This document shows, one piece after another, positions 10,045 through 28,883 of a stretch of DNA of 64,000 nucleotides; the stretch's first letter is position 1, and every line of letters starts with the position of its first letter. Source of the DNA: Gracilinanus agilis (Eukaryota); contig NC_058131.1 of the NCBI RefSeq assembly GCF_016433145.1, positions 402,493,933-402,557,932 of the forward strand, in the 5' to 3' direction. The notes under the pieces were generated by a model, which was not told where the DNA came from, ran no database searches, and was given only the letters and a program-made list of their open reading frames with translations. A program made the translations under genes and the position numbers.

Positions 10045-11471
10045 ATGGTAAATGTCCTGTTTCTCATCTTACTGTCCAAAGCTGAGTCCTAATCCTTTTC
10101 ACTATTGATTTGGGGCCAACAACCTAGGTGGAGGTGTAGTGTAGGGCAGGATAACTGGGGGAGGCGGGGAGGAAGGTCAGGCAGAAGGATGGGATGAGAG
10201 GAAAGAGTAAGTGAAAGCAGGTTTAGGTTCTGAGGTCCAACCCGGTCCTAGTATTCCAGCCATTCGCACTTCTCTGGCTCCCCTGTTTCCCCAGCAGTGG
10301 GACCAACCATGAGATAAATCCCTGATATCATCCCCAGGAGCCCTGGCAGAGGTGGCCACTGCTGTTGCTGCTAGCTCCCCTGCTGTTGCTTCCCTCGTCT
10401 GCCTCAGCCTCCTGTGAGCTGGACGAAGAGGGCAATAATTGCTACTGCAACTTTTCCGCTCCGAACCCTGAATGGGATAGAATTGCGATGTGCATTTCCT
10501 CGGTACAGGCGGATATCGATGGGGGCGGCCACAACTTGGACATCTTTTTGCAGAAAGTAATTGCTGACCCGAGCAAAATCTCGGACATACTGAGATCGCT
10601 GCGCCTAAAACGGCTGAGGCTAAGGGGTGCCCAGGTCCCGGCCCCACTTCTGCATCAGCTCCTGAAGGCATTGACCTACACGCGGATTGAAGAGCTGTCC
10701 CTAGTAGATCTGGTGATTTCGATGCCGCCCCTGCTACCTCCGTCATTCAGTGACAATGACCTCAGGCTGAAAGCCCTGCACCTCCACAGAGTGCTGTGGA
10801 CCGGAGAGGGCAACTTACTGGCGACAGTGGGGCCTTGGCTAAAACCTGGACTGAAGGCACTGAGCTTGACTGGTTTAAACCTGAGCTATGTGCCCTGCCC
10901 AGAGTTGGACGCCTTTGGGGAACTGAACTCTCTAGATCTGTCGGACAATCCAGAGATAACAGAGAATGGCTTAACTTCGGCGCTTTGCTTCTCGAAGCTC
11001 CAGGCACTGAAGGATCTGGCACTTCGGAACACCGGCCTCCAGTCCTTGGGGAGAGTGTGCCGGGCTCTGGAGGCGACGGAGACCAATGTGCAGCGACTGG
11101 ACATCAGTTACAACGAGCTGGGAGGGAAACCCTGGCCTCAGTGTACCTGGCCACCCTCCTTGCTCTCGCTCAACCTGTCCCACGCGAATCTGAAGTGTGT
11201 GCCGAAGCCTCTGCCCAAGAAGTTGCAGCAGCTGGACCTAAGCTACAACCTGCTGAGGAAGCAGCCTCAGTTGCCCCAGGTAACCGACTTGATCCTTGAA
11301 GGGAACCCTTTTGCCTACGCCGGTGCCTCAGCCAGACTGCAAAGGGAGCAGCCGACAGAGGACTGCGCAGTTCTTTCTCGCGGGAGCAAGTTCGCAGGCG
11401 CCACGCTAGCCTTCCTGGTCTCTGGGACAGCAGCCTTGGCGCTGCTGCGCTGGACCAGAGAATTCGCCTGA
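10045..11471 (+). CDS. CD14: Monocyte differentiation antigen CD14 (378 aa; exons 10045-10047, 10338-11471)
   Basis: ATG-only first coding exon (AGCCATG|GTAAAT), acceptor CCCCAG|GAG in frame (MEPWQRWPLLLLL...), CELDEE..CYCNFS N-cap, LRRs (LDLSDNP, LDISYN, LNLSHANL, LDLSYNLL) and a hydrophobic GPI-signal-like C-terminus. Same gene architecture as eutherian CD14. Confidence 0.97.
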
Positions 11472-12316: not shown

Positions 12317-15300
12317 ATGACAAGTAGTGAGCAGGTAAGGAGAAACTTGCCCTCTGGACCTCCCTGGCTGCTTGGGCTCAGGGCCTAGGCCTCATTATCT
12401 TCTCCTGCTTCAGGCTGAGGCTGCAACAGTGACAGCAATGATAGAAGTGGCATCCATACCAGAGACAGGTGAGGAATTCCACCCAAGAGCAGTTCTGGAG
12501 GGGACCCTGAAGTCAGGTTTCCTGTGTCCTGGACAGGAGAACACAGTAGAAGCCCACAGTCCTGAGTAACCCACCACTCTATTACAGATCATGAAACCTA
12601 CAGCCCCCGATTCCTTATAGAGGGTCCTAGAATGCTCTTGCTAGATCCAGGAGACCCTGAGACTCTGGTACTGTTGGGGTGGGGAAAGATGGGGCAAGGC
12701 ATGAGGAGGATGGAGGAAAATGAGGGTATAAACAGGAATTGACCTTACTGACTTTAGTCTTGCACTTAGGAGCACCAATTCACATTTGACTGAGCCTTAG
12801 GCCCAGAGCATGCCCAGGTAGAATAAGGGGGTAGGTGGGGAGGGTGGTTGACAAGTCTGTGTCTCCTTCTGTCTCATTCTATTTCTCCCCCTTGTATCAT
12901 ACTGTATACTGTCCTAGAGACAACTCTTTTGGTACCTTCCCAAGTTGGAGCATGTTGCTTAGAAGGCATGTGGCAGGGAGGAAAGGGAGGACTGTGATGT
13001 CCCAGACTGAAAGTCTTGGGGTCCGATGGAGTAGGGAGCTAATGTTCCCAGAGAGGTGAGCTCTTCTATATCAATACAGAAAACAGAACAGAAGTTCCTG
13101 GAGAGCATTCGGGCTGTGCTGGGCTCAGTATCCAGAGGTTATAGTGTGTCTGTGCTGATTAGGGGCAGAGAAGCCAAGCAGCCAGATCTGGTTCCTCAGG
13201 TGACGAGCTGGAATTCACTTTGCCCTACCTACCATACAGTGTGTGTGTGGATGGGGGGGGGGGCCGAGGGGTGGTGTCAGAGGGACTTTTCTCCTCATCC
13301 TCATTCCACCCCTACCCTCTCTAATATTAATTTCTAGCTCCTGGCAATGCTGTTTGAGGAGATTCAACCTGCAGAATCTGCCTTTCAACCCTCCCTCAGG
13401 ACCCTAAGTCTAGTGCAGGTGACAAATCTTGAAAGGGATTTGCAGGGACTGGGCAGCCCTGGAGAGTGCTTTTCAGGATTTGGAAGCTTTTGATAGGTTC
13501 CACACAAACATATCCCATGCACTTCCCACGACTTCTCATTGCTTTTAGCTCAGTTCTAGTGGGAAGGGTCAAGACTTATTATCTGGAGCAGGGGACCTGA
13601 GCTTGCTGGAGGTGTACCCACTGGGTCTGTGAGTATGCAATTTTTTTTTCTTTATTCCAGTGACAAATTTACACATAAGTTTTCCAAGGTTACATGATTC
13701 ATGGAATTGACAAACAATTCCACTGGGTTATTCATGTATTCTCACTCAAAACCCATTTCCATATTATTCATTTTTATAAGATCAAAACTCTAAATCATAT
13801 ACCCAAACAAACAAGTGATAACTCATATGCTTTCTTCTGCATTTCTACTGTAAGTATGCTACTTTGCCCAGGATAACGAATATTTTCTTCTAGCACTTCC
13901 TCACTTCCCTATTCCACCCCAAGCACCATTCCCACAAAAGCCAGACTGGAGGGCCCTGTTCTGGAGTCCAGTAGCTTGTAATTTTCTGGGAGAAGAGGAA
14001 GCAGAAAAAGCACTATCTTCCCTCATGGACCTTTGATCTCTCAGAGAGCCAGCTGCCCTCTTCAGGGTTTGTCTGTCTATAGACTAGGGTTACCTGCTCA
14101 TTATGTTTTTATGCCTGGGATTCAAGGCTTTTGAAGATCCTGTGGCAGAGGTCCATATTTCAAGATCTTTTCAAGCCTAGGTTTCCACTTTTTTCCCAGG
14201 GTAGTGGAAGGAGCTAGTGAAGCAGAGGTCCTTGACTCCAAATCTGGCTGCCAACTTTACCTCAAGGCAATGGAGGGCTTGGACAGGTATGTGAGTCTGT
14301 GATCCCTGGTAGAAAGAATGAGGGAAGGAGAAAGAAACTCAGAGGGCAACCTAAGGAACCCTGCCCAGAGTTATAACCATCTTCATCCCCAGGGCCTGCT
14401 CCCTTCTTACTGTGACATTTTCCTGCCTGGAGCCCAGCACCATCAAGAGGCCCTGGGTCAGAAGCCTGTGTCGAGGCTCACTGAGAGTCCTGCAGCTCCC
14501 AGAAGCTCCGTGAGTCTAGCTTGGGGTGGGATCCAGGGCAGCAGTTTGAGGGTCCTATAAAATAAGGGGTGGTTAGTTCCCCATACCCAGCAAAAGAACA
14601 CAATGAGCAGGGTACCCTAGTCATACAGACAAAGAAACCCTGAAGAGGGGAGCTGTGCAGAAGACAGTTCCCATAACAAAGACCTGCATTGTGCCTGGCC
14701 TTAGCTCTCACTCCTTGTAGGGACTGCCCTTTATTGCTAGCACTGGCAGGGAAAACCTCCAAGGCCCATGTGGGCTCATTGCTTTGGACTGTGACTCAGT
14801 TACTCTTCGGGAATAGTTACAGTAGCCTGCTGCTCTACTTGGATCCCCGAGGTATGAGGTTGGGGAGGGAGGGAAGGGAAAAGAAGAAGTGAAGGGAGAA
14901 TTAATTCTTTTGGGGGAGGGTCCCTAGAAAGCTCTGCTCCCCAAGCTTCCAAATACCAAGGTTCTCAAAGAAGCTTCTTATCCAGGCTTCTCACTGAAAA
15001 GTGGGTGTTCCATACCCAGTTCCAGTTCAGTGGGAAGGAGGAGCCCCATGTGACTCTTAGCAGGAGAAGTTGGGAGGGGTGGACAAAATTGTTCTTTGAC
15101 TACACCAAAAGTCCATCCCACTCCTCATGAATTGGTCCCATTGCCTGCCTGTTCTCCCTGGCAGTCACCCCTTTGGGGCTGCTCCTGGCCTCACTATCAG
15201 GGGCTAAAAGAGCCCAGGACCCAGCTCAGTCAAAGCAGGTTTCTCCCATACTGTGGGATGCTTCAGAAGAAATTCAGGCTCGGCGTGCAGCTGTTCAGGC

Positions 15301-18300
15301 CCTGCGCTCTGGGCTTTCTGGAGCCACTCTGCAGGAGAGTCAGCTTACCCAGCTAAGCCTGGTGCTCAGGGAATTGAAGGTGAGACAGAACTGGTTCTGG
15401 TACCTGGGTACTATCCTCCCACCTAGGGCAAAAGAGGCTCTGGAAACTATTGACTGAACTTGCTATCTGCAGGTATTGAAAAACCAAAGCCGGTACTGTG
15501 AGACTATGATGCTCAAGGGACCTGGAGCCTCTGCACCTGGGCTTCCAAACATGCAGGTATGTGGGTGCCCAATTCCCTAGACCAGTGATGGCAAACCTTT
15601 TAGAACATTTTAGGGACCTGTACCCCACCCTGCCTGTGTTTGGAGGCAGGGCAGGACTCCATCTGTGTGTGTGTGTGTGTGTGTTGCTGCACATGCCCAT
15701 AGAGAGGTCTCTGCATGCCATTTTTGACACATGTGCCATAGGTTCACCATCATGACCCTAGACCTTGAGATTAGCATTTTGTCACCACCCATAGAAGATG
15801 GCTCTGGGGCTAATTTTAAAGCATCCTTTCTCAGTATATTTGATTTCAAATTTGCACTTAGGGTGCAAAAAGGGACATTTTGTTATAACTTTATATAATT
15901 GGCCTATTTTAAGGTGAGGCTCCTTGGTGTAGTGGATAGAGTACTGGACTAGCAGTCTAGAACATCTGGGTTTAAATCCTACCTCTTAAAATTACCAGTT
16001 GGGCTATGATGCTTAAGACACTTAACATCTCTGAGCCTCTGACAAATCTGTGTCAGTTATAGGCAGGTTGAGGTCTATCTCCATTGTATACTTTAAATAG
16101 AAGAAAATTCTGTTTTCCACAACAAGAGGTACTTTTATGATGAAAAGTCCTCTGTGTTGAATCAGATGTTGGGGCAGCTAGGTGACTCAGTGGATTGAGA
16201 GCCAGGAGGTCCTAAGTTCAAATCTGACCTCAAATACTTCCTAGCTCTGTGACTTTGAGCAAGTCACTTAACCCCCATTGCCTAGCCTGGTGATGGCAAA
16301 TCTATTACACGTGACACGTGTAGCCATTTTTGATGACACACGGCTGCGTACAGAGAAGTATGGGGCCGCATGCCAAGGATGAAACATTTGCTATAGTGTA
16401 GTATAGACACTCTGTGCACTATAGATGAAAATTCTACCTATATTAATTTATCTATTTTGGTTTATTAAATACAGTTATATATCATAATTATAAATTTTTG
16501 TTATTTAAACTATAAATATCACAAAATTATTGTATTTTTCTCGAAGTGACACACCACCTGAGTTATGCTTGGTTTTTTAGCAAATTTTGACATACCAAGC
16601 TCAAAAGGTTGCCCATCACTGGCCTACCCCTTATCATTCTTTTGTCTTGGAAACAATACACAGTATTAATTCTAAAAAAGAAAGTTTAGGAAAAAAACAA
16701 CAAAAACCAGTGAATTGGAGGTCAAAGGCTCCAGTGAACAGTAATAATTTTGAAACCTTTGAGAGGAAAGGAAGAGAATGAGCAGAAGTACAAATACCTT
16801 GCTAAAGCTTTCCTATTTCTCCATCTTCCTAGAGAGATATCTCCCTTATATGTTCCTTTCTGGGTTTATAAGTTGGCCTCTTCTAGCCCTGCTGGTACCT
16901 CAAATAGTATCTCTTACATATAGAGTGATGACAGAGGAGAGACAGACCTCAGACTCAATCCCAATTCCTATTTATTAATTTAAAACCCTTACCTTCTGTC
17001 TTAGAATTGATACTAAGTATTGGTTCCAAGGCAGAAGAGCTGGAATTAAGTGACTTGCCCAATGTCACACAATTAAGAAGTTTCTGAGATCATATTTGAA
17101 CCCAGGACCTCCAGTCTTTAAGCTTGGCTCTCTATCCACTGACCCACCTATTTGCCCCTCTTCCTATTTATTTTGATACCTTGTTAATCCTGGTACCTAT
17201 TTAGCTTGAAAGAAGGAAAATATGTATTCTAAGTACCCTTACAATCTGGCATCTGATCTCACAATATTACTCTTTGCTTTTTAAATTTAAGTAAATTTTT
17301 TCAAGTAACAAAAATCCACCTTCTCTCCCTTCTCACCTGCTTCCTATCCCCACAGGAAAAAAAAAAGAAAGAAAGAAAACAAAACCCTCATAATAAATTG
17401 GCATAGTTGAGCAAAACAAATTCCTGTATTGGCCAAGCCTAAAAAACCTGTTGCAATTTGGGCTCTTTCTCTCACCAGGAAGTGGGCAGCTCTATTGCAT
17501 CATGAGTGTTTGAATCAGGCCAAGCCATCTCCTTTGTTGATCAGCATTCTTAAAACATTCAAAGATGTTTGTCTTTATAATATTGTTGTCATAAGAATCT
17601 TTTCAAGGTTACTGATTACATTTTAATGATATCTATAGTTGCTTAAAAATAACATAAAAGAATGAAATTAAAACCCAACCTTTCAAGGAGGAGGCTTTGT
17701 TGTATTATAACATTTCTCTCTAGGTGCTAGAATCAAAGGAGACCTTTTCTCCCATTTTCCAGAAGCACCCCCAAGGTGAGTTCAGGCCCTGTGGCCCAGA
17801 CACTATCTTCTTGGAGTTCCTCTTAGTTTGTCTATCTTCCCCCAGAATAAAAATATTTCTCTTTGGCCGCATGCACTTCAGAAACTCTGGGCCTGGGGAA
17901 GAAGTTTCTCCTATCAGCAGCACCAAGAAACTACCCTCTTGAGGGCTCCAAGAAAAAGGTAAAGCTTCACCCATTCCTATAGAGAGTACGTGGGGATTTC
18001 CCAGGGAACAGTTTTCTGTGGGTAAAATTAGGTTAAAATGAACACTATTGGAAATATGAAAGAAGGAAAGGAGTCACAAAAGGGCAGGTTGAATTATAGA
18101 AAATTTCTGAGAGGGAAAGCCCCACTGTTTTATCTTGGTGATAATGGTGACAATCAGGTATGATTTATGCTTTTCTTGTATTTTAGGGTTTTAGATTTGG
18201 AAAGGACCTTAGAGATCATCTAGTTCAATCTCATTATTCTCATAGATGAGGAAATTAAGGATAGTAGAGAGTAAGTTATTTCCTTGAGAGTTCATAGATA

Positions 18301-20182
18301 ATAAGTAGCAGAGCAGACATTTAAATTCAGGACCTCTGGGACAGCTAGGTAGGGCAGTGGATAGAGAGCCATACCTGGAGTGGGGAGGACCTGGGTTCAA
18401 ATCTAGCCTCAGATACTTCCTGCTGTGTAACCCTGAGCAAGTCACTTAACACCAATTATCTAGCTCTTCTATCTTGAAACTAAAACTTGTATCAATTCTA
18501 AGAGAGAAAGTAAGAGTTAAAAAAAATAATTGATACTAAGAAGGATTTTAAAAAAATTTAGGTCCTCTGACTCCAAATCCAATGATCTGATCATGATCCC
18601 TTTTTTTAGAAAGAGTCGGTAGAGTTACTTCCTATCTCTCTTAGACTTAGCTGATTTTACTGCTCAGGAATTCACTGCCAGTAGTGCTGAAACCTCTAAC
18701 TTTGAGGTGGGGGCAATGGGAATTGGGAGCTTTGTTTGAGGCAAAACCAATGGCCTCGGTGGGGAAAGTAGGCCTTATTTCTAAGGCAGCAGTTTTTTAA
18801 AATTAAATTTAAATTTAAATTAATTTATTTTAACAATTTTTAAAAGTTCCAAATTCTCTTCTCACCCCTTCTCCACCCATTTGAGAAGGCAAAAAATATG
18901 AAACCCATTTTACATGTGAAGTCATGCAAAACATATTTCTATATTAGTAAGGCAAGAGTTATTAAATGTTTGTTGTCATGGACCCATTTGGTAATCTAGT
19001 AAAACTTAATACCACTATGGCTTGTTGCCTATCACTGAAGGAAATGCTGGATTTCAGATAACAGTAAATGAAAATAAATATCTAATTTCTTTCCCCATCC
19101 AAGTTCAATAGATTCATAAAATCTAATGGGACTCCAGGTTAATAACCCTTGCCTCTAAGGGAGAGGAAAATGGAACTTGGCCCAATGGAAAAAAAAAACA
19201 AAACAGAATGTATGTAAGTCCTCCTTGTTGGTGTCTATTCTCTTAGCCCCCTGACGTAGCACTGCAGTTTATGTTAGCACGGGCCCATAGGCAGCTGCTC
19301 CAGGAGCATCACCGATCCCAGGTCCAAGAGGAACTGAGCTGCTTGAGGCAAGACAAGAAAATAGCAACAGATCAGGTTAGTCCCAGATATCTAGGGGGGA
19401 AAAATAAAAGAGACCAAGACTAGTGCTGAAGCTAAAGAGTAGGCTTCTTCTGTCTCAGCAAATACCGATGTTCATTAGGCCCCAGACCTATCTGCTGAGA
19501 ATCTGAGCTGGAGGCAGGATCATGAAGCACTGGCCTTACAAGTGGAGGCTCTGAGATTGGAGCGAGATGCAGCTGAACAGGACCTAGAGGCCCTGTACAA
19601 GCTGTATGTCCAAGGAGCCCGGACACAGACTTGCCACATCTTGCAGGTCAGTAGTAAACAAAGAATGGTGGCAGAGGAATGATGAAGCTCCAGCTTAATA
19701 ACTCAAGTTAGTGGCAGATGGCCACTCAAGACCCAGCTAAAGAAATAGATGTCTGAATTCCTCTAACCAACAATCCATTAAAAGCACAGGTGTTCCAGGC
19801 TTGTCAGGGGCTGTGGAAGGAGCGGGCTACTGCCAGAGAGTTACATCATCGAATCCTGTTGGCTGGAGTCTTACAGGATGCCATCTCTCTGGCCACACAG
19901 AACCAACAGCTCCAAGTCCAGAATGAGCAGCTCAAGAAGGGTGAGGATTATGAGAAGGAGAAGTGTAGGAAAGAAGTGGGGTTCAAATGACAATAGAAAT
20001 AGGGACTGTTTCACTAATCTCAACCCATGAGTATATCCCAGGGCTTTGTCCTGAAGTACAAGGGATTACTATTAGGAGAGATGAGATTGGGGTCTGGCAA
20101 CCTTGGTCCTCCAACAGGCCTTCAGTGATTCTGTGTTCCATGTCTCCCAACAGAAATCACAGAGAGGAGGGAAAAAGTTTAA
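12317..20182 (+). CDS. Uncharacterised 18-exon gene: degenerate kinesin-motor-like domain plus coiled coils (574 codons including stop; one in-frame TGA at 12791-12793, so possibly a recent pseudogene)
   Basis: Exons 12317-12334, 12414-12468, 12588-12667, 12770-12817, 13080-13199, 13338-13418, 13549-13628, 14200-14286, 14393-14509, 14721-14851, 15165-15379, 15473-15556, 17724-17775, 17882-17958, 19247-19375, 19479-19646, 19790-19940, 20154-20182. All 17 introns are GT-AG with matching phases (1722 nt total). Kinesin-like blocks occur in canonical order: HQFTFD*ALGPE, FLESIRAVLGSVSRGYSVSVLIRG, QDLL, VVEGASEAEV, SLLTVTFS, TQLLFGNSYSSLLLYLDP. Confidence 0.8.
13643..13860 (-). mobile_element. LINE-1 3' end fragment
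   Basis: T-rich start followed by ...CAATTCCACTGGGTT..., the same marsupial L1 3' UTR motif as in 3490-3620. Confidence 0.75.
15583..15755. mobile_element. hAT/Charlie MITE (OposCharlie1-like termini)
   Basis: Left TIR CAGTGATGGCAAACCT, right ...CATAGGTTCACCATCATG, 8-bp TSD CCCTAGAC on both sides. Confidence 0.85.
16171..16700 (+). mobile_element. SINE interrupted by a hAT MITE (MITE 16288-16621)
   Basis: SINE head at 16171-16287 and tail resuming at about 16630. MITE termini TGGTGATGGCAAATCT and AGGTTGCCCATCACTG, TSD GCCTAGCC/GCCTACCC. Confidence 0.8.
16978..17159 (-). mobile_element. Opossum-type SINE
   Basis: Reverse-complement consensus AAACCCTTACCTTCTGTCTTAGAAT...CCACCTATTTGCCCC. Confidence 0.85.
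18190..18590. mobile_element. MIR/CORE-SINE (-) with a nested opossum SINE (+, about 18338-18520)
   Basis: CORE motif GATGAGGAAATTAAGG...; nested GGGACAGCTAGGTAGGGCAGTGG head. Confidence 0.65.
18952..19150. mobile_element. Ancient hAT-Charlie (Charlie4-like) non-autonomous element; related copies at about 32265-32450 and 41712-41930
   Basis: Shared motif TGTCATGGACCC..TTGG(C/T)A..CT(A/G)GT(G/A)AA..C in all three copies, with GTTA(T/A)TAAC-type termini. Family name is from memory. Confidence 0.55.
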
Positions 20183-22157: not shown

Positions 22158-23631
22158 TTTTCATGCTTTAGATCTTAATCTCACCCATATTTGGGTCCCC
22201 TCCAAGATCTTCAACCACTATATCCTCTAATAATAACCTCCTGTCTTATCTCTCCCTCTGTTGGATTCTTCCTAAACCTATTTTTTATATTCACTTTGAT
22301 CTACAAATCCTACCCCAAGTCTGTTCTACTCTAGTCTCACTTTTCTCCCTTCCCAGGTTGAATGGTAGTTGACCAGTCTAGCCAAATCTTGTTCGCTACC
22401 CAAAATCCTTTGCTCCCTTGACCTAGGTCCATTCAGGCCTGTTAATATCTTCTATCCTGAGATCACCTCATTATCTGCAGCCCACTGGGTCCACATTCAT
22501 GGTATCTAAACTAGCTTTGTCATTTCATTTTTTTACTTTTTTGTAATCCTTTTACTCTTCCTGGAGTGTCTCTATGTCCCTCTCAGAGTTAATGCAAATT
22601 TCATCTTTCTTCAAGTCTCTTATTTCTCTCTCAGCAGGACTTCAATTCTTTTCTAACTGAAGAAAAAAAGCAAAAATCCAACCAATCAAACAAGAACCTC
22701 TCATCTTTCTTATTCCAAGCTTCCTCCCGTTTTTGAATAATAACAGCTCATATGTATAACAGCTCTAAAGGTTTACAAAGTGCTTTACACACATTTTTTC
22801 ATTTTATACTTAACAATCCTGTGAGGTCAGTGCTACTATTATCCTTTTTATAGATGAAGAAAGTGAGTCGGAGAGAAAGTAAGTAACTTAGCTATAGTCA
22901 GACACCTAGTGAATGTCTTCTCTCCTTGCACCATGCATGAGACAGCCTACCTTTGGGCCAACGAGTATCTCTAGAATAGCTAGGTAGAGGCTGCTAGGGG
23001 ACAAAGGACAGAGCACTGAGTTTTGAGTCAGGAAGATCTGGGTTCAAATTTGACCTTCCATAATTCTTGTGACACTGGGAAAGTCACTTAAACCTATCTG
23101 CCTCAGTTTCCTCAACTGTAAAGTGAGGAGAGTAACAGTACAACATAGGTTATTGTGAAGATTAAATGAGATATTGGTAAAGTACTTAGCACAGTGCATG
23201 AGGCATAGCAGTTCTTGTTCCCTATCCCACCTTACCCCAATACAGATGTTTGATTTACATATCTAGCCCTCATTTTTCTTCTGAGCCCAAGTCCCATACC
23301 TGACAGGCATTTCCATCTAGTTTGAACCAGAGGAATCTCAGAATCAACATGGCTAAAACTGAACTTATTTATCTTTTCCTAATATCTGGTGAGAGCATTG
23401 CCCTTCAAGTCCCAGGTATACAATCTCAGCCACAATTAACTCTTCACTCTCTCTCTCCTCCATATTAATCACTCTCTGGCCAATTCTTTCACTGTCTTGC
23501 CTCTGGTCCCTTTCTCTATTCTCACTTGGTCATCAGCTTAGTTCAGGCCTTATCACCTTACTATTGCAGTAGCTTCTTAATTAGACCACTTGTCTCCAGT
23601 GTCCTCTCATCCTTCCTTTAAACAGCAGTCA

Positions 23632-27375: not shown

Positions 27376-28338
27376 CTACCGGCCTCCATAGTAGAGATGT
27401 ACAGCCAGACCAATAAGCAGGAGAGCCAAGAAGAAGGCAGCCGTGAGCTGGAGGTGAAGCAGGGTGGCTGAGAGCACAGCATTGACAATCAGTGAAGAGG
27501 AGACGACAAAGAGACGGGTGATACTGCTCCCATGCTTCATGATGGCTGACATAAGCAATCCATTAAGGGCCTGACTCAGAACCACCAGCCCTGCCCAGGC
27601 TGAGAAACCCTCTAGGAGCCCAGGGCCTGGCCCACCTCCCACATAGAGCCCCAAGTTCATAAGTACCCCAAAGGAGTACAAAAACAGGTTCTGCAAAGCC
27701 AAGGGCAGACGCTGCCTCTTCATGAGCAGCTCAGTGTAGACTGAGGAGAGGCCAGAGATGAGGCAGTAAAGCAAGAGCAGCAACAGACCCAGGGGAGTCA
27801 CATGGAGGGGCATGGCTGCTGCTGGGGATGGTGGGAGGAGGCCCTGCGGATCCTGGAGGCCTGCAGCAGCATAGCAGGCTCCAGCACCAGTCAGTAGCAG
27901 AAGTGCCAGCCCCTGCCTGGCAGAAAGACGGCGATTCAGGCAGAGGCAGTAAAGGAGAGCTGTGCTGCCAATTTTGAGGTTGCTCATCACTTGGTAGGTG
28001 CTTGGGTCCATGTACCGCTGCAGGTGAATGACGAGGTTGTTGTTGGCACCATAGAGCAGTGCAGAAAGTGCAAAAGGGGCAGCCTGGCGCCAAGGCAGAG
28101 TGTCCCATAGTCTTGGCTGCCTCCTGGCCATCAAAGAGAATGCAGATAGCAGTAATTTGGTCAGTTCGGTCCAAAGCACAGCTGAAGAGGGACGGAAGGG
28201 GACATGGCCATCTATTCGACACAAGGCCAGCAGTGGGGCATGGGCACCATACATGGTTGTGGACAAGAGGAGCATAAGCACCCATCGGGCCTGGCTCGGG
28301 CGCCCTATGCCCGGTATGCCCCCTTCCTCCACATTCAT
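27376..28338 (-). CDS. SLC35A4: Probable UDP-sugar transporter SLC35A4, main ORF (320 aa, single exon)
   Basis: MNVEEGGIPGIGRPSQARWVLMLLLST...PFRPSSAV..TELTKLLL...DPSTYQVMSNLKIGSTA... is a multi-TM nucleotide-sugar transporter. The ORF track starts at GTG 28344; the first ATG is 28338. Confidence 0.97.
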   Translation of the reverse strand: MNVEEGGIPGIGRPSQARWVLMLLLSTTMYGAHAPLLALCRIDGHVPFRPSSAVLWTELTKLLLSAFSLMARRQPRLWDTLPWRQAAPFALSALLYGANNNLVIHLQRYMDPSTYQVMSNLKIGSTALLYCLCLNRRLSARQGLALLLLTGAGACYAAAGLQDPQGLLPPSPAAAMPLHVTPLGLLLLLLYCLISGLSSVYTELLMKRQRLPLALQNLFLYSFGVLMNLGLYVGGGPGPGLLEGFSAWAGLVVLSQALNGLLMSAIMKHGSSITRLFVVSSSLIVNAVLSATLLHLQLTAAFFLALLLIGLAVHLYYGGR

Positions 28339-28883
28339 CCCCACTCTACCAACTGAGGCCTTAGGTGGGTAAGTAATGGCAAAAGTAAGAGTGGGGGGAA
28401 AGTTTATAGTCCATCAAGTAAAACTGAATGATGGAGCCAGCTCCTAGGAAGGCAAATTCTAGATACATTATCAAATTAACAAGAAACTAGGTAGGCTATA
28501 GGTTAGAGCCATAAGTAGAGGAAATAGGGACTTATCTACCCCTTCCTTAAAAAAAAAAGAAAGAAGCAAAGAAGGAAAGAAAGAAGGAAAAAGAAAGAAA
28601 GAAAAAAGAGAGAGACAATACTCTAGAAGCACAGATGCTGGAAGACAAAAAGAAGGATATGGGTAGAAGACAGGGAGAAAACATCTGTGGTCTAGAATAG
28701 CTGAGGCAACTGAAAATAAGTAGCTAGGGAGGTTAGAGATGGGGCAAGACAGCTAGCCTTCCTTGATGACCCTATATAGTCAGTCCTGCTGCCTATCCAT
28801 GCTGACCCAGATTCCAAGGCTTGTCCTCAGAGGGCAGTGGGTTTTCCTGAGGAGGCTTTGGAGGGAAGACTGCTGAGAGTGTA

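What the first reader, a model, noticed from the sequence alone, without database searches (positions are those of the whole stretch)
13080..14851. All nucleotide-handling motifs are erased: candidate pseudo-kinesin
Seen in sequence: at the P-loop position (after SVLIR, about 13164) the sequence is GREAKQPD rather than GQTGSGKT, and the following loop is short. Switch I (NxxSSRSH) is replaced by GLDRACS, switch II (DLAGSE) by QLPEAP, and the L11/alpha4 entry is largely deleted (PEAPDCPLLLALAG). RxRP is absent, and the microtubule-binding HVPYRDSKL becomes HVGSLLWTV. Established: kinesin-fold proteins without ATPase activity exist (yeast Vik1, the non-catalytic partner of Kar3). Inference: the hydrophobic core was kept while catalysis was lost, so the protein may act as a non-motor heterodimer partner or scaffold through its coiled coils.
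Basis: partly seen in the sequence, partly recalled or inferred. Interest (0 to 1): 0.82.

Follow-up and report, generated by a model that had tools for sequence, protein, structure and literature searches.

The report
Conserved mammalian dead-kinesin gene (E230025N22Rik orthologue)
These six exons belong to an opossum-family copy of an unstudied gene found across mammals (mouse E230025N22Rik) whose N-terminal domain descends from a kinesin motor but has lost every ATP-handling motif, and this particular copy also carries a premature stop codon upstream.

Summary
Window 13080-14851 holds exons 5-10 of an 18-exon + strand gene (12317-20182) lying between a CD14-like and an SLC35A4-like gene. 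All splice sites are AG/GT and the exons join in frame.

The product is 92.7% identical to Monodelphis LOC100026344. About 200 mammalian orthologues were found, among them mouse 'RIKEN cDNA E230025N22 gene' and rat LOC502155. No non-mammal and no hominoid was listed.

Kinesin descent is supported but weak by sequence:
- A family profile hits almost only kinesin motors in the PDB (best E 4.5e-5).
- Pfam Kinesin matches 14 of 21 members, all below threshold.
- Foldseek's top 50 hits are all kinesins (E 4.7e-6), but on a low-confidence model.

The P-loop is deleted, switch I and II are replaced, and L11/alpha4 is shortened. All orthologues share these changes, and the replacing residues are the best-conserved blocks. 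dN/dS for exons 5-10 is 0.30-0.31. The loss is therefore old and constrained, not local decay.

Two caveats apply. This genome's copy has an in-frame TGA at codon 59 (exon 4, 12791-12793), with no other defect. The proposed role as a partner or scaffold is untested.

The gene is already in databases (some entries auto-named 'kinesin motor domain-containing') but has never been studied. The scan had noted both the gene and the TGA before.

The parts
12317..12334 (+). Exon 1, with the ATG start codon
   Evidence: Matches residues 1-6 of Monodelphis P0024. GT donor present.
12414..12468 (+). Exon 2: the beta1 place, where RxRP would be (reads ...MIEVASIPE...)
   Evidence: AG/GT, in frame. Aligned to kinesin beta1 'RVIARVRP'.
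12588..12667 (+). Exon 3
   Evidence: AG/GT, in frame. tblastn match to P0024.
12770..12817 (+). Exon 4 (48 nt, phase 0 to 0), corresponding to kinesin 'FxFDxVF'. It holds the in-frame TGA at 12791-12793 (codon 59).
   Evidence: Koala has AGA (Arg) at this codon. Other marsupials have R and Monodelphis has Q. Models P0008, P0036 and P0065 lack this exon.
13080..13199 (+). Exon 5: alpha1, beta3 and the place of the P-loop. GREAKQPD lies at 13164-13187; the GxxxxGK(T/S) loop is deleted.
   Evidence: GYSVS..RGRE is among the most conserved blocks of the family.
13338..13418 (+). Exon 6: alpha2 (LLAMLFEE) and beta4 (TLSLVQ)
13549..13628 (+). Exon 7: the L8/beta5 place (DLL ... PLGL)
14200..14286 (+). 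Exon 8: alpha3 and the start of the switch I place (GLDR at 14276-14286 plus 14393)
14393..14509 (+). Exon 9: switch I remnant (R-ACS), beta6, beta7 and the switch II place (QLPEAP at 14493-14509 plus 14721)
   Evidence: aligned to KIF14 SSRSH...VDLAGSE.
14721..14851 (+). Exon 10: shortened alpha4 (DCPLLLALAGK), the L12/alpha5 place (HVGSLLWTV at 14767-14793) and beta8
   Evidence: aligned to KIF14 residues 305-352.
15165..15379 (+). Exon 11: alpha6 remnant and the neck / first stalk helix
   Evidence: This exon was the query that recovered the orthologues. It is predicted helical.
15473..15556 (+). Exon 12
17724..17775 (+). Exon 13
17882..17958 (+). Exon 14
   Evidence: The acceptor was chosen as the only AG that keeps the frame.
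19247..19375 (+). Exon 15: conserved helical tail
19479..19646 (+). Exon 16: conserved helical tail (LQVEALRLERDAAEQDL...)
19790..19940 (+). Exon 17: conserved helical tail
20154..20182 (+). Exon 18, with the stop codon (…EITERREKV*)
   Evidence: Matches the Sminthopsis C-terminus EVTERRKKV.

Best explanation
Window 13080-14851 holds exons 5-10 of the didelphid orthologue of a mammal-wide, unstudied gene: mouse E230025N22Rik, and 'uncharacterized LOC...' in most other species.

Shown:
- The gene has 18 exons and sits between CD14 and SLC35A4, as it does in Monodelphis, koala, cat and seal.
- Its N-terminal ~290 residues are homologous to a kinesin motor domain.
- That domain lacks the P-loop (deleted), switch I, switch II, RxRP and about 30 residues of L11/alpha4/L12.
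- All orthologues examined share these losses.
- The residues that replaced the motifs are the best-conserved parts of the domain, and the exons evolve under purifying selection.

Inferred:
- The domain cannot bind or hydrolyse ATP and cannot step along microtubules.
- It persists as a non-catalytic module held as a dimer by the ~250-residue helical tail.
- It most likely acts as an adaptor or regulator that uses the former nucleotide and switch face as a binding surface, for a partner protein or possibly another kinesin.

In this genome the reading frame is broken by a TGA at codon 59 (exon 4). The full-length protein is therefore either not made here, or made only if the 48-nt in-frame exon 4 is skipped, or the TGA is an allele or an error of one sequenced animal.
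For: Gene model:
- 18 exons, all AG/GT, 1722 nt in frame.
- 92.7% identity over 372 residues to Monodelphis LOC100026344.

Synteny:
- In the window, an LRR (CD14-like) ORF lies upstream and a Nuc_sug_transp (SLC35A4-like) ORF lies downstream on the - strand.
- The downstream neighbour recurs in Monodelphis, cat and seal; the upstream one in Monodelphis and koala.

Family:
- About 200 mammalian orthologues, including 'Riken cDNA E230025N22 gene', rat LOC502155 and Cricetulus 'Kinesin, motor domain containing protein'.

Kinesin homology:
- Family profile against the PDB: 20 of 23 hits are kinesin motors, best KIFC3 at E 4.5e-5.
- A separate second-half profile has KIF14 as its top four hits, colinear, but at E about 0.9.
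- Pfam PF00225 matches 14 of 21 members and PF16796 matches 6 of 21, all below threshold.
- ESM-Atlas features: most of the 100 nearest clusters carry PF00225.
- Foldseek: the top 50 hits are all kinesin motors, best E 4.7e-6, probability 1.0.
- VIA-align: 290 chains at Z >= 5, best 7.3, about 140 residues aligned.
- The order of secondary-structure elements matches that of kinesin.

Motif loss shared and constrained:
- Alignments A2 and A4.
- Conservation peaks at GYSVS..RGRE, LVPQLL.MLFEE, TLSLVQ, PLGLVVE, RACSLLTVT, RG.LR.LQLP and DCPLL.VLAG.

Selection:
- dN/dS is 0.36 (window-koala) and 0.42 (cat-seal).
- For exons 5-10 alone it is 0.30 and 0.31, Fisher p 2e-6 and 5e-5.
Against: - Full-length orthologues get no Pfam hit at the curated threshold, and single exons hit nothing.
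- AlphaFold confidence is low (pLDDT 41.8 and 47.9). TM-scores to kinesins are only 0.2-0.31 and Z stays below 8, so a retained kinesin fold is not shown.
- An omega of 0.3-0.4 is weak constraint, and one paper reports dN/dS above 1 for this gene in hares (PMC6065068).
- This genome's copy has a premature TGA.
- No RNA data for this species could be examined.
- Nothing here tests partner binding, dimerisation or microtubule binding.
Confidence: 0.72

Rival explanations
1. In this species the locus is a recently inactivated unitary pseudogene. The family is functional elsewhere, but here the exons in 13080-14851 are no longer translated, because the TGA at codon 59 ends the frame or triggers nonsense-mediated decay.
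For: There is an in-frame TGA at 12791-12793 where other marsupials encode Arg and Monodelphis encodes Gln. The 31-mers around it occur in the one DNA run that holds this stretch. No SECIS-like RNA family was found in the window, so reading the TGA as selenocysteine has no support.
Against: It is the only defect in 573 codons, and all 34 splice sites are intact. The window lineage shows fewer unique amino-acid changes than Monodelphis (8 against 14). Exon 4 is 48 nt and in phase 0-0, so skipping it keeps the frame, and three orthologue models lack it. Only one data set holds the site, possibly from the animal that was assembled, so it may be an allele or an error.
Confidence: 0.3
2. The dead domain still binds microtubules statically. 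The protein would then act as a non-motile microtubule anchor or brake, as is thought for kinesin-11/KIF26, NOD and Costal2, rather than as a partner-binding scaffold.
For: It descends from a kinesin. The alpha5, beta8 and alpha6 remnants, and the L8 block PLGLVVE, are conserved. Six members match Pfam Microtub_bd below threshold.
Against: About 30 residues of L11/alpha4/L12, the main tubulin contact in kinesins, are missing. The conserved basic and aromatic residues of HxPYRxSKLT are replaced by ..GSLPWIV... Pfam Microtub_bd covers the N-terminal part of the motor, not the tubulin interface (own knowledge).
Confidence: 0.15
3. The motif loss is local decay of an ordinary kinesin gene in this lineage, or the missing motifs sit in exons that were overlooked.
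For: None beyond the premature TGA.
Against: The same losses appear in every aligned orthologue, from marsupials to all four eutherian superorders. The P-loop and switch II places are continuous with beta3 and beta7 inside exons 5 and 9. dN/dS is about 0.3 on these exons.
Confidence: 0.02
4. The resemblance to kinesin is chance or convergent. The N-terminal region would be an unrelated or partly disordered domain in front of a coiled coil.
For: No Pfam hit reaches threshold. AlphaFold confidence is low. Z-scores stay below 8, a range the tool itself calls common.
Against: Four different methods point to kinesin and to little else, colinearly over about 290 residues: HMM against the PDB, Pfam sub-threshold hits in 14 of 21 members, language-model features, and Foldseek 3Di+AA at E 4.7e-6.
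Confidence: 0.04

Closest known systems
Mouse E230025N22Rik / rat LOC502155 / 'uncharacterized protein LOC...' of many mammals (e.g. Monodelphis LOC100026344)
   Same: It is the same gene, an orthologue. Identity to the Monodelphis protein is 92.7%, the exon pattern is the same, and so is the position between CD14 and SLC35A4. The degenerate motifs and the conserved tail are also shared.
   Different: This genome's copy has an in-frame TGA at codon 59. No functional study of the family was found. The six papers that name the gene only list it among other genes.
Vik1 and Cik1 of Saccharomyces cerevisiae (non-catalytic motor-homology-domain partners of Kar3, kinesin-14)
   Same: A kinesin-related globular domain without a nucleotide site, attached to a coiled coil.
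   Different: In Vik1 and Cik1 the domain is C-terminal and has no detectable sequence similarity to kinesins. Here it is N-terminal and similarity is still detectable. Vik1 binds microtubules, whereas here the alpha4/L12 contact is largely deleted. A pairing with a catalytic kinesin has not been tested.
Kinesin-11 (KIF26A/KIF26B), Costal2/KIF7 and Drosophila NOD: divergent kinesins with little or no motility
   Same: Animal kinesin relatives with an N-terminal motor-like domain that act as anchors or scaffolds rather than transporters (own knowledge). KIF7 and NOD motor structures are among the structural matches.
   Different: Those proteins are recognised as full kinesin domains by Pfam and keep a nucleotide pocket (own knowledge). 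This family misses the curated Pfam threshold and has the P-loop physically deleted.

Membership tests
Kinesin superfamily (catalytic motor domain, Pfam PF00225) | Significant sequence similarity to the motor domain | tested here: inconclusive
   Family profile against the PDB: best E 4.5e-5, 20 of 23 hits are kinesins. Pfam PF00225 matches 14 of 21 members, but with a best E of only 0.0016 and below the gathering score. Full-length orthologues get no hit. This shows homology, not membership by the curated threshold.
Kinesin superfamily (catalytic motor domain, Pfam PF00225) | P-loop GxxxxGK(T/S) after beta3 | tested here: not met
   The sequence reads ..LIRG-REAKQPD.. The kinesin loop falls in a 9+2 residue deletion in the HMM alignments. 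It is absent in all aligned orthologues.
Kinesin superfamily (catalytic motor domain, Pfam PF00225) | Switch I NxxSSRSH | tested here: not met
   The sequence reads ..GLDRACS.. Only the Arg aligns with SSRSH. Orthologues show the same state.
Kinesin superfamily (catalytic motor domain, Pfam PF00225) | Switch II DxxGxE | tested here: not met
   LQLPEAP aligns with VDLAGSE. Orthologues show the same state.
Kinesin superfamily (catalytic motor domain, Pfam PF00225) | Kinesin fold (three-layer alpha/beta core) | tested here: inconclusive
   AlphaFold pLDDT is 41.8 and 47.9. Foldseek's top 50 hits are all kinesins at E 4.7e-6, but with TM 0.2-0.31. VIA Z is at most 7.3 over about 140 residues. The order of secondary-structure elements matches.
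Kinesin superfamily (catalytic motor domain, Pfam PF00225) | Microtubule-stimulated ATPase and motility | not testable with these tools
   This needs biochemistry. The sequence predicts no ATPase activity.
E230025N22Rik / LOC100026344 orthologous group | High full-length similarity and the same exon pattern | tested here: met
   92.7% identity over 372 residues to Monodelphis, 72-78% to other marsupials and about 50% to eutherians. The tail exons match as well.
E230025N22Rik / LOC100026344 orthologous group | Conserved position between CD14 and SLC35A4 | tested here: met
   Window. Monodelphis, cat, koala and seal.
E230025N22Rik / LOC100026344 orthologous group | Open reading frame intact | tested here: not met
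   TGA at codon 59 (12791-12793). The other 572 codons and all splice sites are intact.
Vik1/Cik1-type non-catalytic partner of a kinesin | Kinesin-like domain without a nucleotide site, joined to a coiled coil | tested here: inconclusive
   The motifs are absent. The tail is helical and conserved, but coiled-coil formation is only inferred. The fold is not confirmed.
Vik1/Cik1-type non-catalytic partner of a kinesin | C-terminal position of the domain | tested here: not met
   The domain occupies residues 1 to about 290, ahead of the stalk.
Vik1/Cik1-type non-catalytic partner of a kinesin | Heterodimer with a catalytic kinesin | not testable with these tools

The most novel reading that the evidence does not exclude
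The family is the first animal counterpart of Vik1/Cik1. A kinesin-derived dead head, kept across mammals, would pair through its conserved stalk with a catalytic kinesin, or use its remodelled nucleotide/switch face to bind a partner, and so tune that motor. The absence of hominoids from the orthologue lists, if it reflects a real loss in apes, would help explain why the gene has escaped study.
Probability: 0.12. Interest if true: 0.8.

Novelty: new member of a known kind. Interest (0 to 1): 0.5.

Why it matters
Standard lists of mammalian kinesins are built from human and mouse motors that pass domain thresholds (own knowledge), and this gene falls below them.

It appears to be a kinesin-derived pseudoenzyme that:
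- has been retained since before the marsupial-eutherian split,
- has its ATP site physically deleted,
- yet has remnants under selection.

Because the mouse has an orthologue (E230025N22Rik), the question of what a dead kinesin head is kept for can be tested directly by knockout, interaction proteomics and biochemistry.

For genome annotation, the result explains a run of 'uncharacterized LOC' genes next to CD14. It also flags that this species' copy may be freshly disabled.

Tried and rejected
- Single-exon searches found nothing. Pfam on eight exon pieces gave no kinesin hit, and the PDB sequence search with exons 5 and 10 gave none.
- Pfam on five full-length orthologues gave no kinesin hit.
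No RNA or DNA reads could therefore be laid, and exon 4 inclusion and the TGA could not be checked in reads.
- The RNA runs hold only 5-9% of the words and belong to another organism label, probably a relative. Only one DNA run holds the TGA region.
- The first AlphaFold run (21 sequences) had pLDDT 41.8, and its Foldseek search was not significant: E at least 0.06, TM about 0.1.
- The selenocysteine reading of the TGA was rejected for lack of support. No Rfam family, hence no SECIS, reached threshold anywhere in the window, and orthologues encode Arg or Gln there.
- DNA for Monodelphis and Petaurus could not be fetched. dN/dS against the closest relative was therefore impossible, and an amino-acid relative-rate count was used instead.
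- The origin of P0009, a possible monotreme, could not be established.
- The search for the parent kinesin subfamily failed. No kinesin sequences could be obtained, so no tree was built. The PDB hits (KIFC3, KHC, kinesin-8, KIF1A/13B) point to no single subfamily.
- Literature searches for kinesin+CD14+SLC35A4, pseudokinesin terms, LOC identifiers and unitary pseudogene+kinesin found nothing relevant.
Full report
**What is in the sequence.** The window is vertebrate DNA with introns. On the + strand, six stretches each have an AG acceptor and a GT donor: 13080-13199, 13338-13418, 13549-13628, 14200-14286, 14393-14509 and 14721-14851. Joined, they give 205 in-frame residues.

GREAKQPD begins at 13164, directly after SVLIR. 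GLDR|ACS and PEAP|DCPLLLALAG span exon junctions. QLPEAP ends exon 9. HVGSLLWTV lies at 14767-14793.

**The whole gene.** I extended the model by eye and by tblastn with orthologues. This gave an 18-exon gene at 12317-20182: 1722 nt, 573 codons, every intron AG/GT, and a stop at 20180-20182.

Upstream is an LRR (CD14-like) ORF at 10365-11471 (+). Downstream is a nucleotide-sugar-transporter (SLC35A4-like) ORF at 27376-28344 (-).

The only defect is an in-frame TGA at codon 59 (12791-12793, exon 4). This was also noted earlier by the scan, and I verified it here.

**Orthologues.** Single exons hit nothing in Pfam or among PDB sequences. An exhaustive HMMER search with exon 11 (71 aa) then found full-length proteins.

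The best hit is 92.7% identical to my model over 372 residues. It is Monodelphis domestica LOC100026344, so the window comes from another didelphid.

Profile searches listed about 200 proteins, all mammalian:
- many marsupials;
- all four eutherian superorders;
- monkeys and lemurs;
- rodents, including 'Riken cDNA E230025N22 gene' (Mus spicilegus, Nannospalax, Peromyscus) and rat LOC502155;
- Cricetulus 'Kinesin, motor domain containing protein';
- two whale entries that UniRef names 'Kinesin motor domain-containing protein'.

No hominoid and no non-mammal appeared, which is absence from lists and not proof of absence.

The gene order is conserved. The SLC35A4-like neighbour follows the gene in Monodelphis, cat and seal, and the CD14-like neighbour precedes it in Monodelphis and koala.

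**Is it kinesin-derived?** Full-length orthologues give no Pfam hit. The other evidence is as follows.
- A profile of the N-terminal 350 residues hits kinesin motor domains in the PDB almost exclusively: 22 of 22 hits with 21 sequences, and 20 of 23 with 50 sequences. The best hit is KIFC3 at E 9e-5 and 4.5e-5.
- A separate profile of the second half has KIF14 as its top four hits, at colinear positions, though only at E about 0.9.
- Scanned one by one, 14 of 21 members match PF00225 (best E 0.0016) and 6 match PF16796 (best E 8.6e-5). All are below threshold.
- Language-model features place most of the 100 nearest ESM-Atlas clusters in PF00225.
- AlphaFold models are poor: pLDDT 41.8 with 21 sequences, and 47.9 with pTM 0.43 with 50 sequences. 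Their order of helices and strands follows the kinesin order.
- On the second model all top 50 hits are kinesin motors (best E 4.7e-6, probability 1.0), but TM is only 0.2-0.31.
- VIA-align gives Z up to 7.3 over about 140 residues.

I conclude that homology to the kinesin motor is well supported. Retention of a compact kinesin fold is plausible but not shown.

**Motif status.** In the HMM alignments the kinesin P-loop and the residues after it fall into a 9+2 residue deletion between ..RG-R and E...

SSRSH aligns with ..R-A-C-S.., where only the Arg is kept. VDLAGSE aligns with LQLPEA-. The roughly 45 residues between switch II and alpha5 are reduced to about 15. The beta1 RxRP place reads VEVE or EVAS.

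The P-loop and switch II places lie inside exons 5 and 9, directly following their strands. No overlooked exon could therefore supply them.

**Old loss or local decay?** All aligned orthologues (21 and 50 sequences) show the same losses. The replacing residues are among the best-conserved blocks of the domain:
- GYSVS..RGRE
- LVPQLL.MLFEE
- TLSLVQ
- PLGLVVE
- RACSLLTVT
- RG.LR.LQLP
- DCPLL.VLAG

Nei-Gojobori dN/dS values are below.

| Comparison | Whole gene | Exons 5-10 | Fisher p (exons 5-10) |
|---|---|---|---|
| Window vs koala | 0.36 | 0.30 | 2e-6 |
| Cat vs seal | 0.42 | 0.31 | 5e-5 |

The loss therefore predates the marsupial-eutherian split and the remnant is under purifying, if modest, selection. 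One paper reports dN/dS above 1 for this gene in hares (PMC6065068), which fits a fast-evolving gene.

**The copy in this genome.** The TGA replaces Arg (AGA in koala; R in other marsupials) or Gln (Monodelphis).
- No SECIS or any other Rfam family is found in the window.
- There is no other defect.
- The window lineage carries fewer unique amino-acid changes than Monodelphis, 8 against 14.
- Exon 4 is 48 nt in phase 0-0, and three orthologue models lack it, so skipping it would keep the frame.
- Only one DNA run holds the site.
- The RNA runs belong to another organism label and hold little of the stretch.

Three possibilities stay open: a very recent pseudogene, an allele or error of one animal, or a tolerated stop. 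I give the pseudogene reading about 0.3.

**How it most likely works.** This part is inferred. Without a P-loop or switches, and with L11/alpha4/L12 shortened, the head should neither hydrolyse ATP nor bind tubulin in the canonical way.

The conserved helical tail probably dimerises the protein. It is 64-94% identical among the eutherians listed and is predicted helical at the neck.

The strong conservation at the former nucleotide and switch face suggests a new binding surface. A non-motor adaptor or regulator is the best guess. A Vik1-like pairing with a catalytic kinesin is possible but untested. Static microtubule binding is a weaker alternative.

**Known or new.** The gene exists in databases as a predicted, mostly 'uncharacterized' protein, and automatic pipelines have sometimes labelled it kinesin-like.

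The paper library holds six papers naming E230025N22Rik. The three I opened only list it, and none has it in its title or abstract. No description of it as a motif-less kinesin relative was found.

I file it as a new, unstudied member of the known kind 'non-catalytic kinesin relatives'. It is not a member of the catalytic kinesin family.

Noticed in passing
window 12791-12793 (exon 4, 12770-12817): In-frame TGA at codon 59 of the kinesin-like gene, upstream of the finding. Koala has AGA, other marsupials have R and Monodelphis has Q. The exon is 48 nt in phase 0-0, and three orthologue models omit it.
   Followed up: partly
window 10365-11471 (+) and 27376-28344 (-): The flanking genes are an LRR protein (CD14-like) and a nucleotide-sugar transporter (SLC35A4-like). 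The same neighbours flank the orthologues: the SLC35A4-like gene in Monodelphis, cat and seal, and the CD14-like gene in Monodelphis and koala.
   Followed up: yes
orthologue lists: Old World and New World monkeys and lemurs have predicted orthologues, but no ape or human protein appeared among about 200 listed. This may reflect a loss or non-annotation in hominoids. It was not checked in any genome.
   Followed up: no
window 17776-17881 and P0024 / P0001 (Monodelphis models): The 656-aa Monodelphis model reads through what is intron 13 here, where the window has a stop. The 605-aa model has a frame-shifted C-terminus compared with all other orthologues. The public models of this gene are therefore inconsistent.
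   Followed up: partly
window about 15665-15690 (intron 12): A (TG)n microsatellite lies inside the intron. There are further TG/CA runs near 23620.
   Followed up: no
The tool states that this is no evidence of anything.
   Followed up: no
P0122 (Oryctolagus cuniculus): The rabbit orthologue is named 'plectin' by its source. This looks like a misnaming of this family.
   Followed up: no
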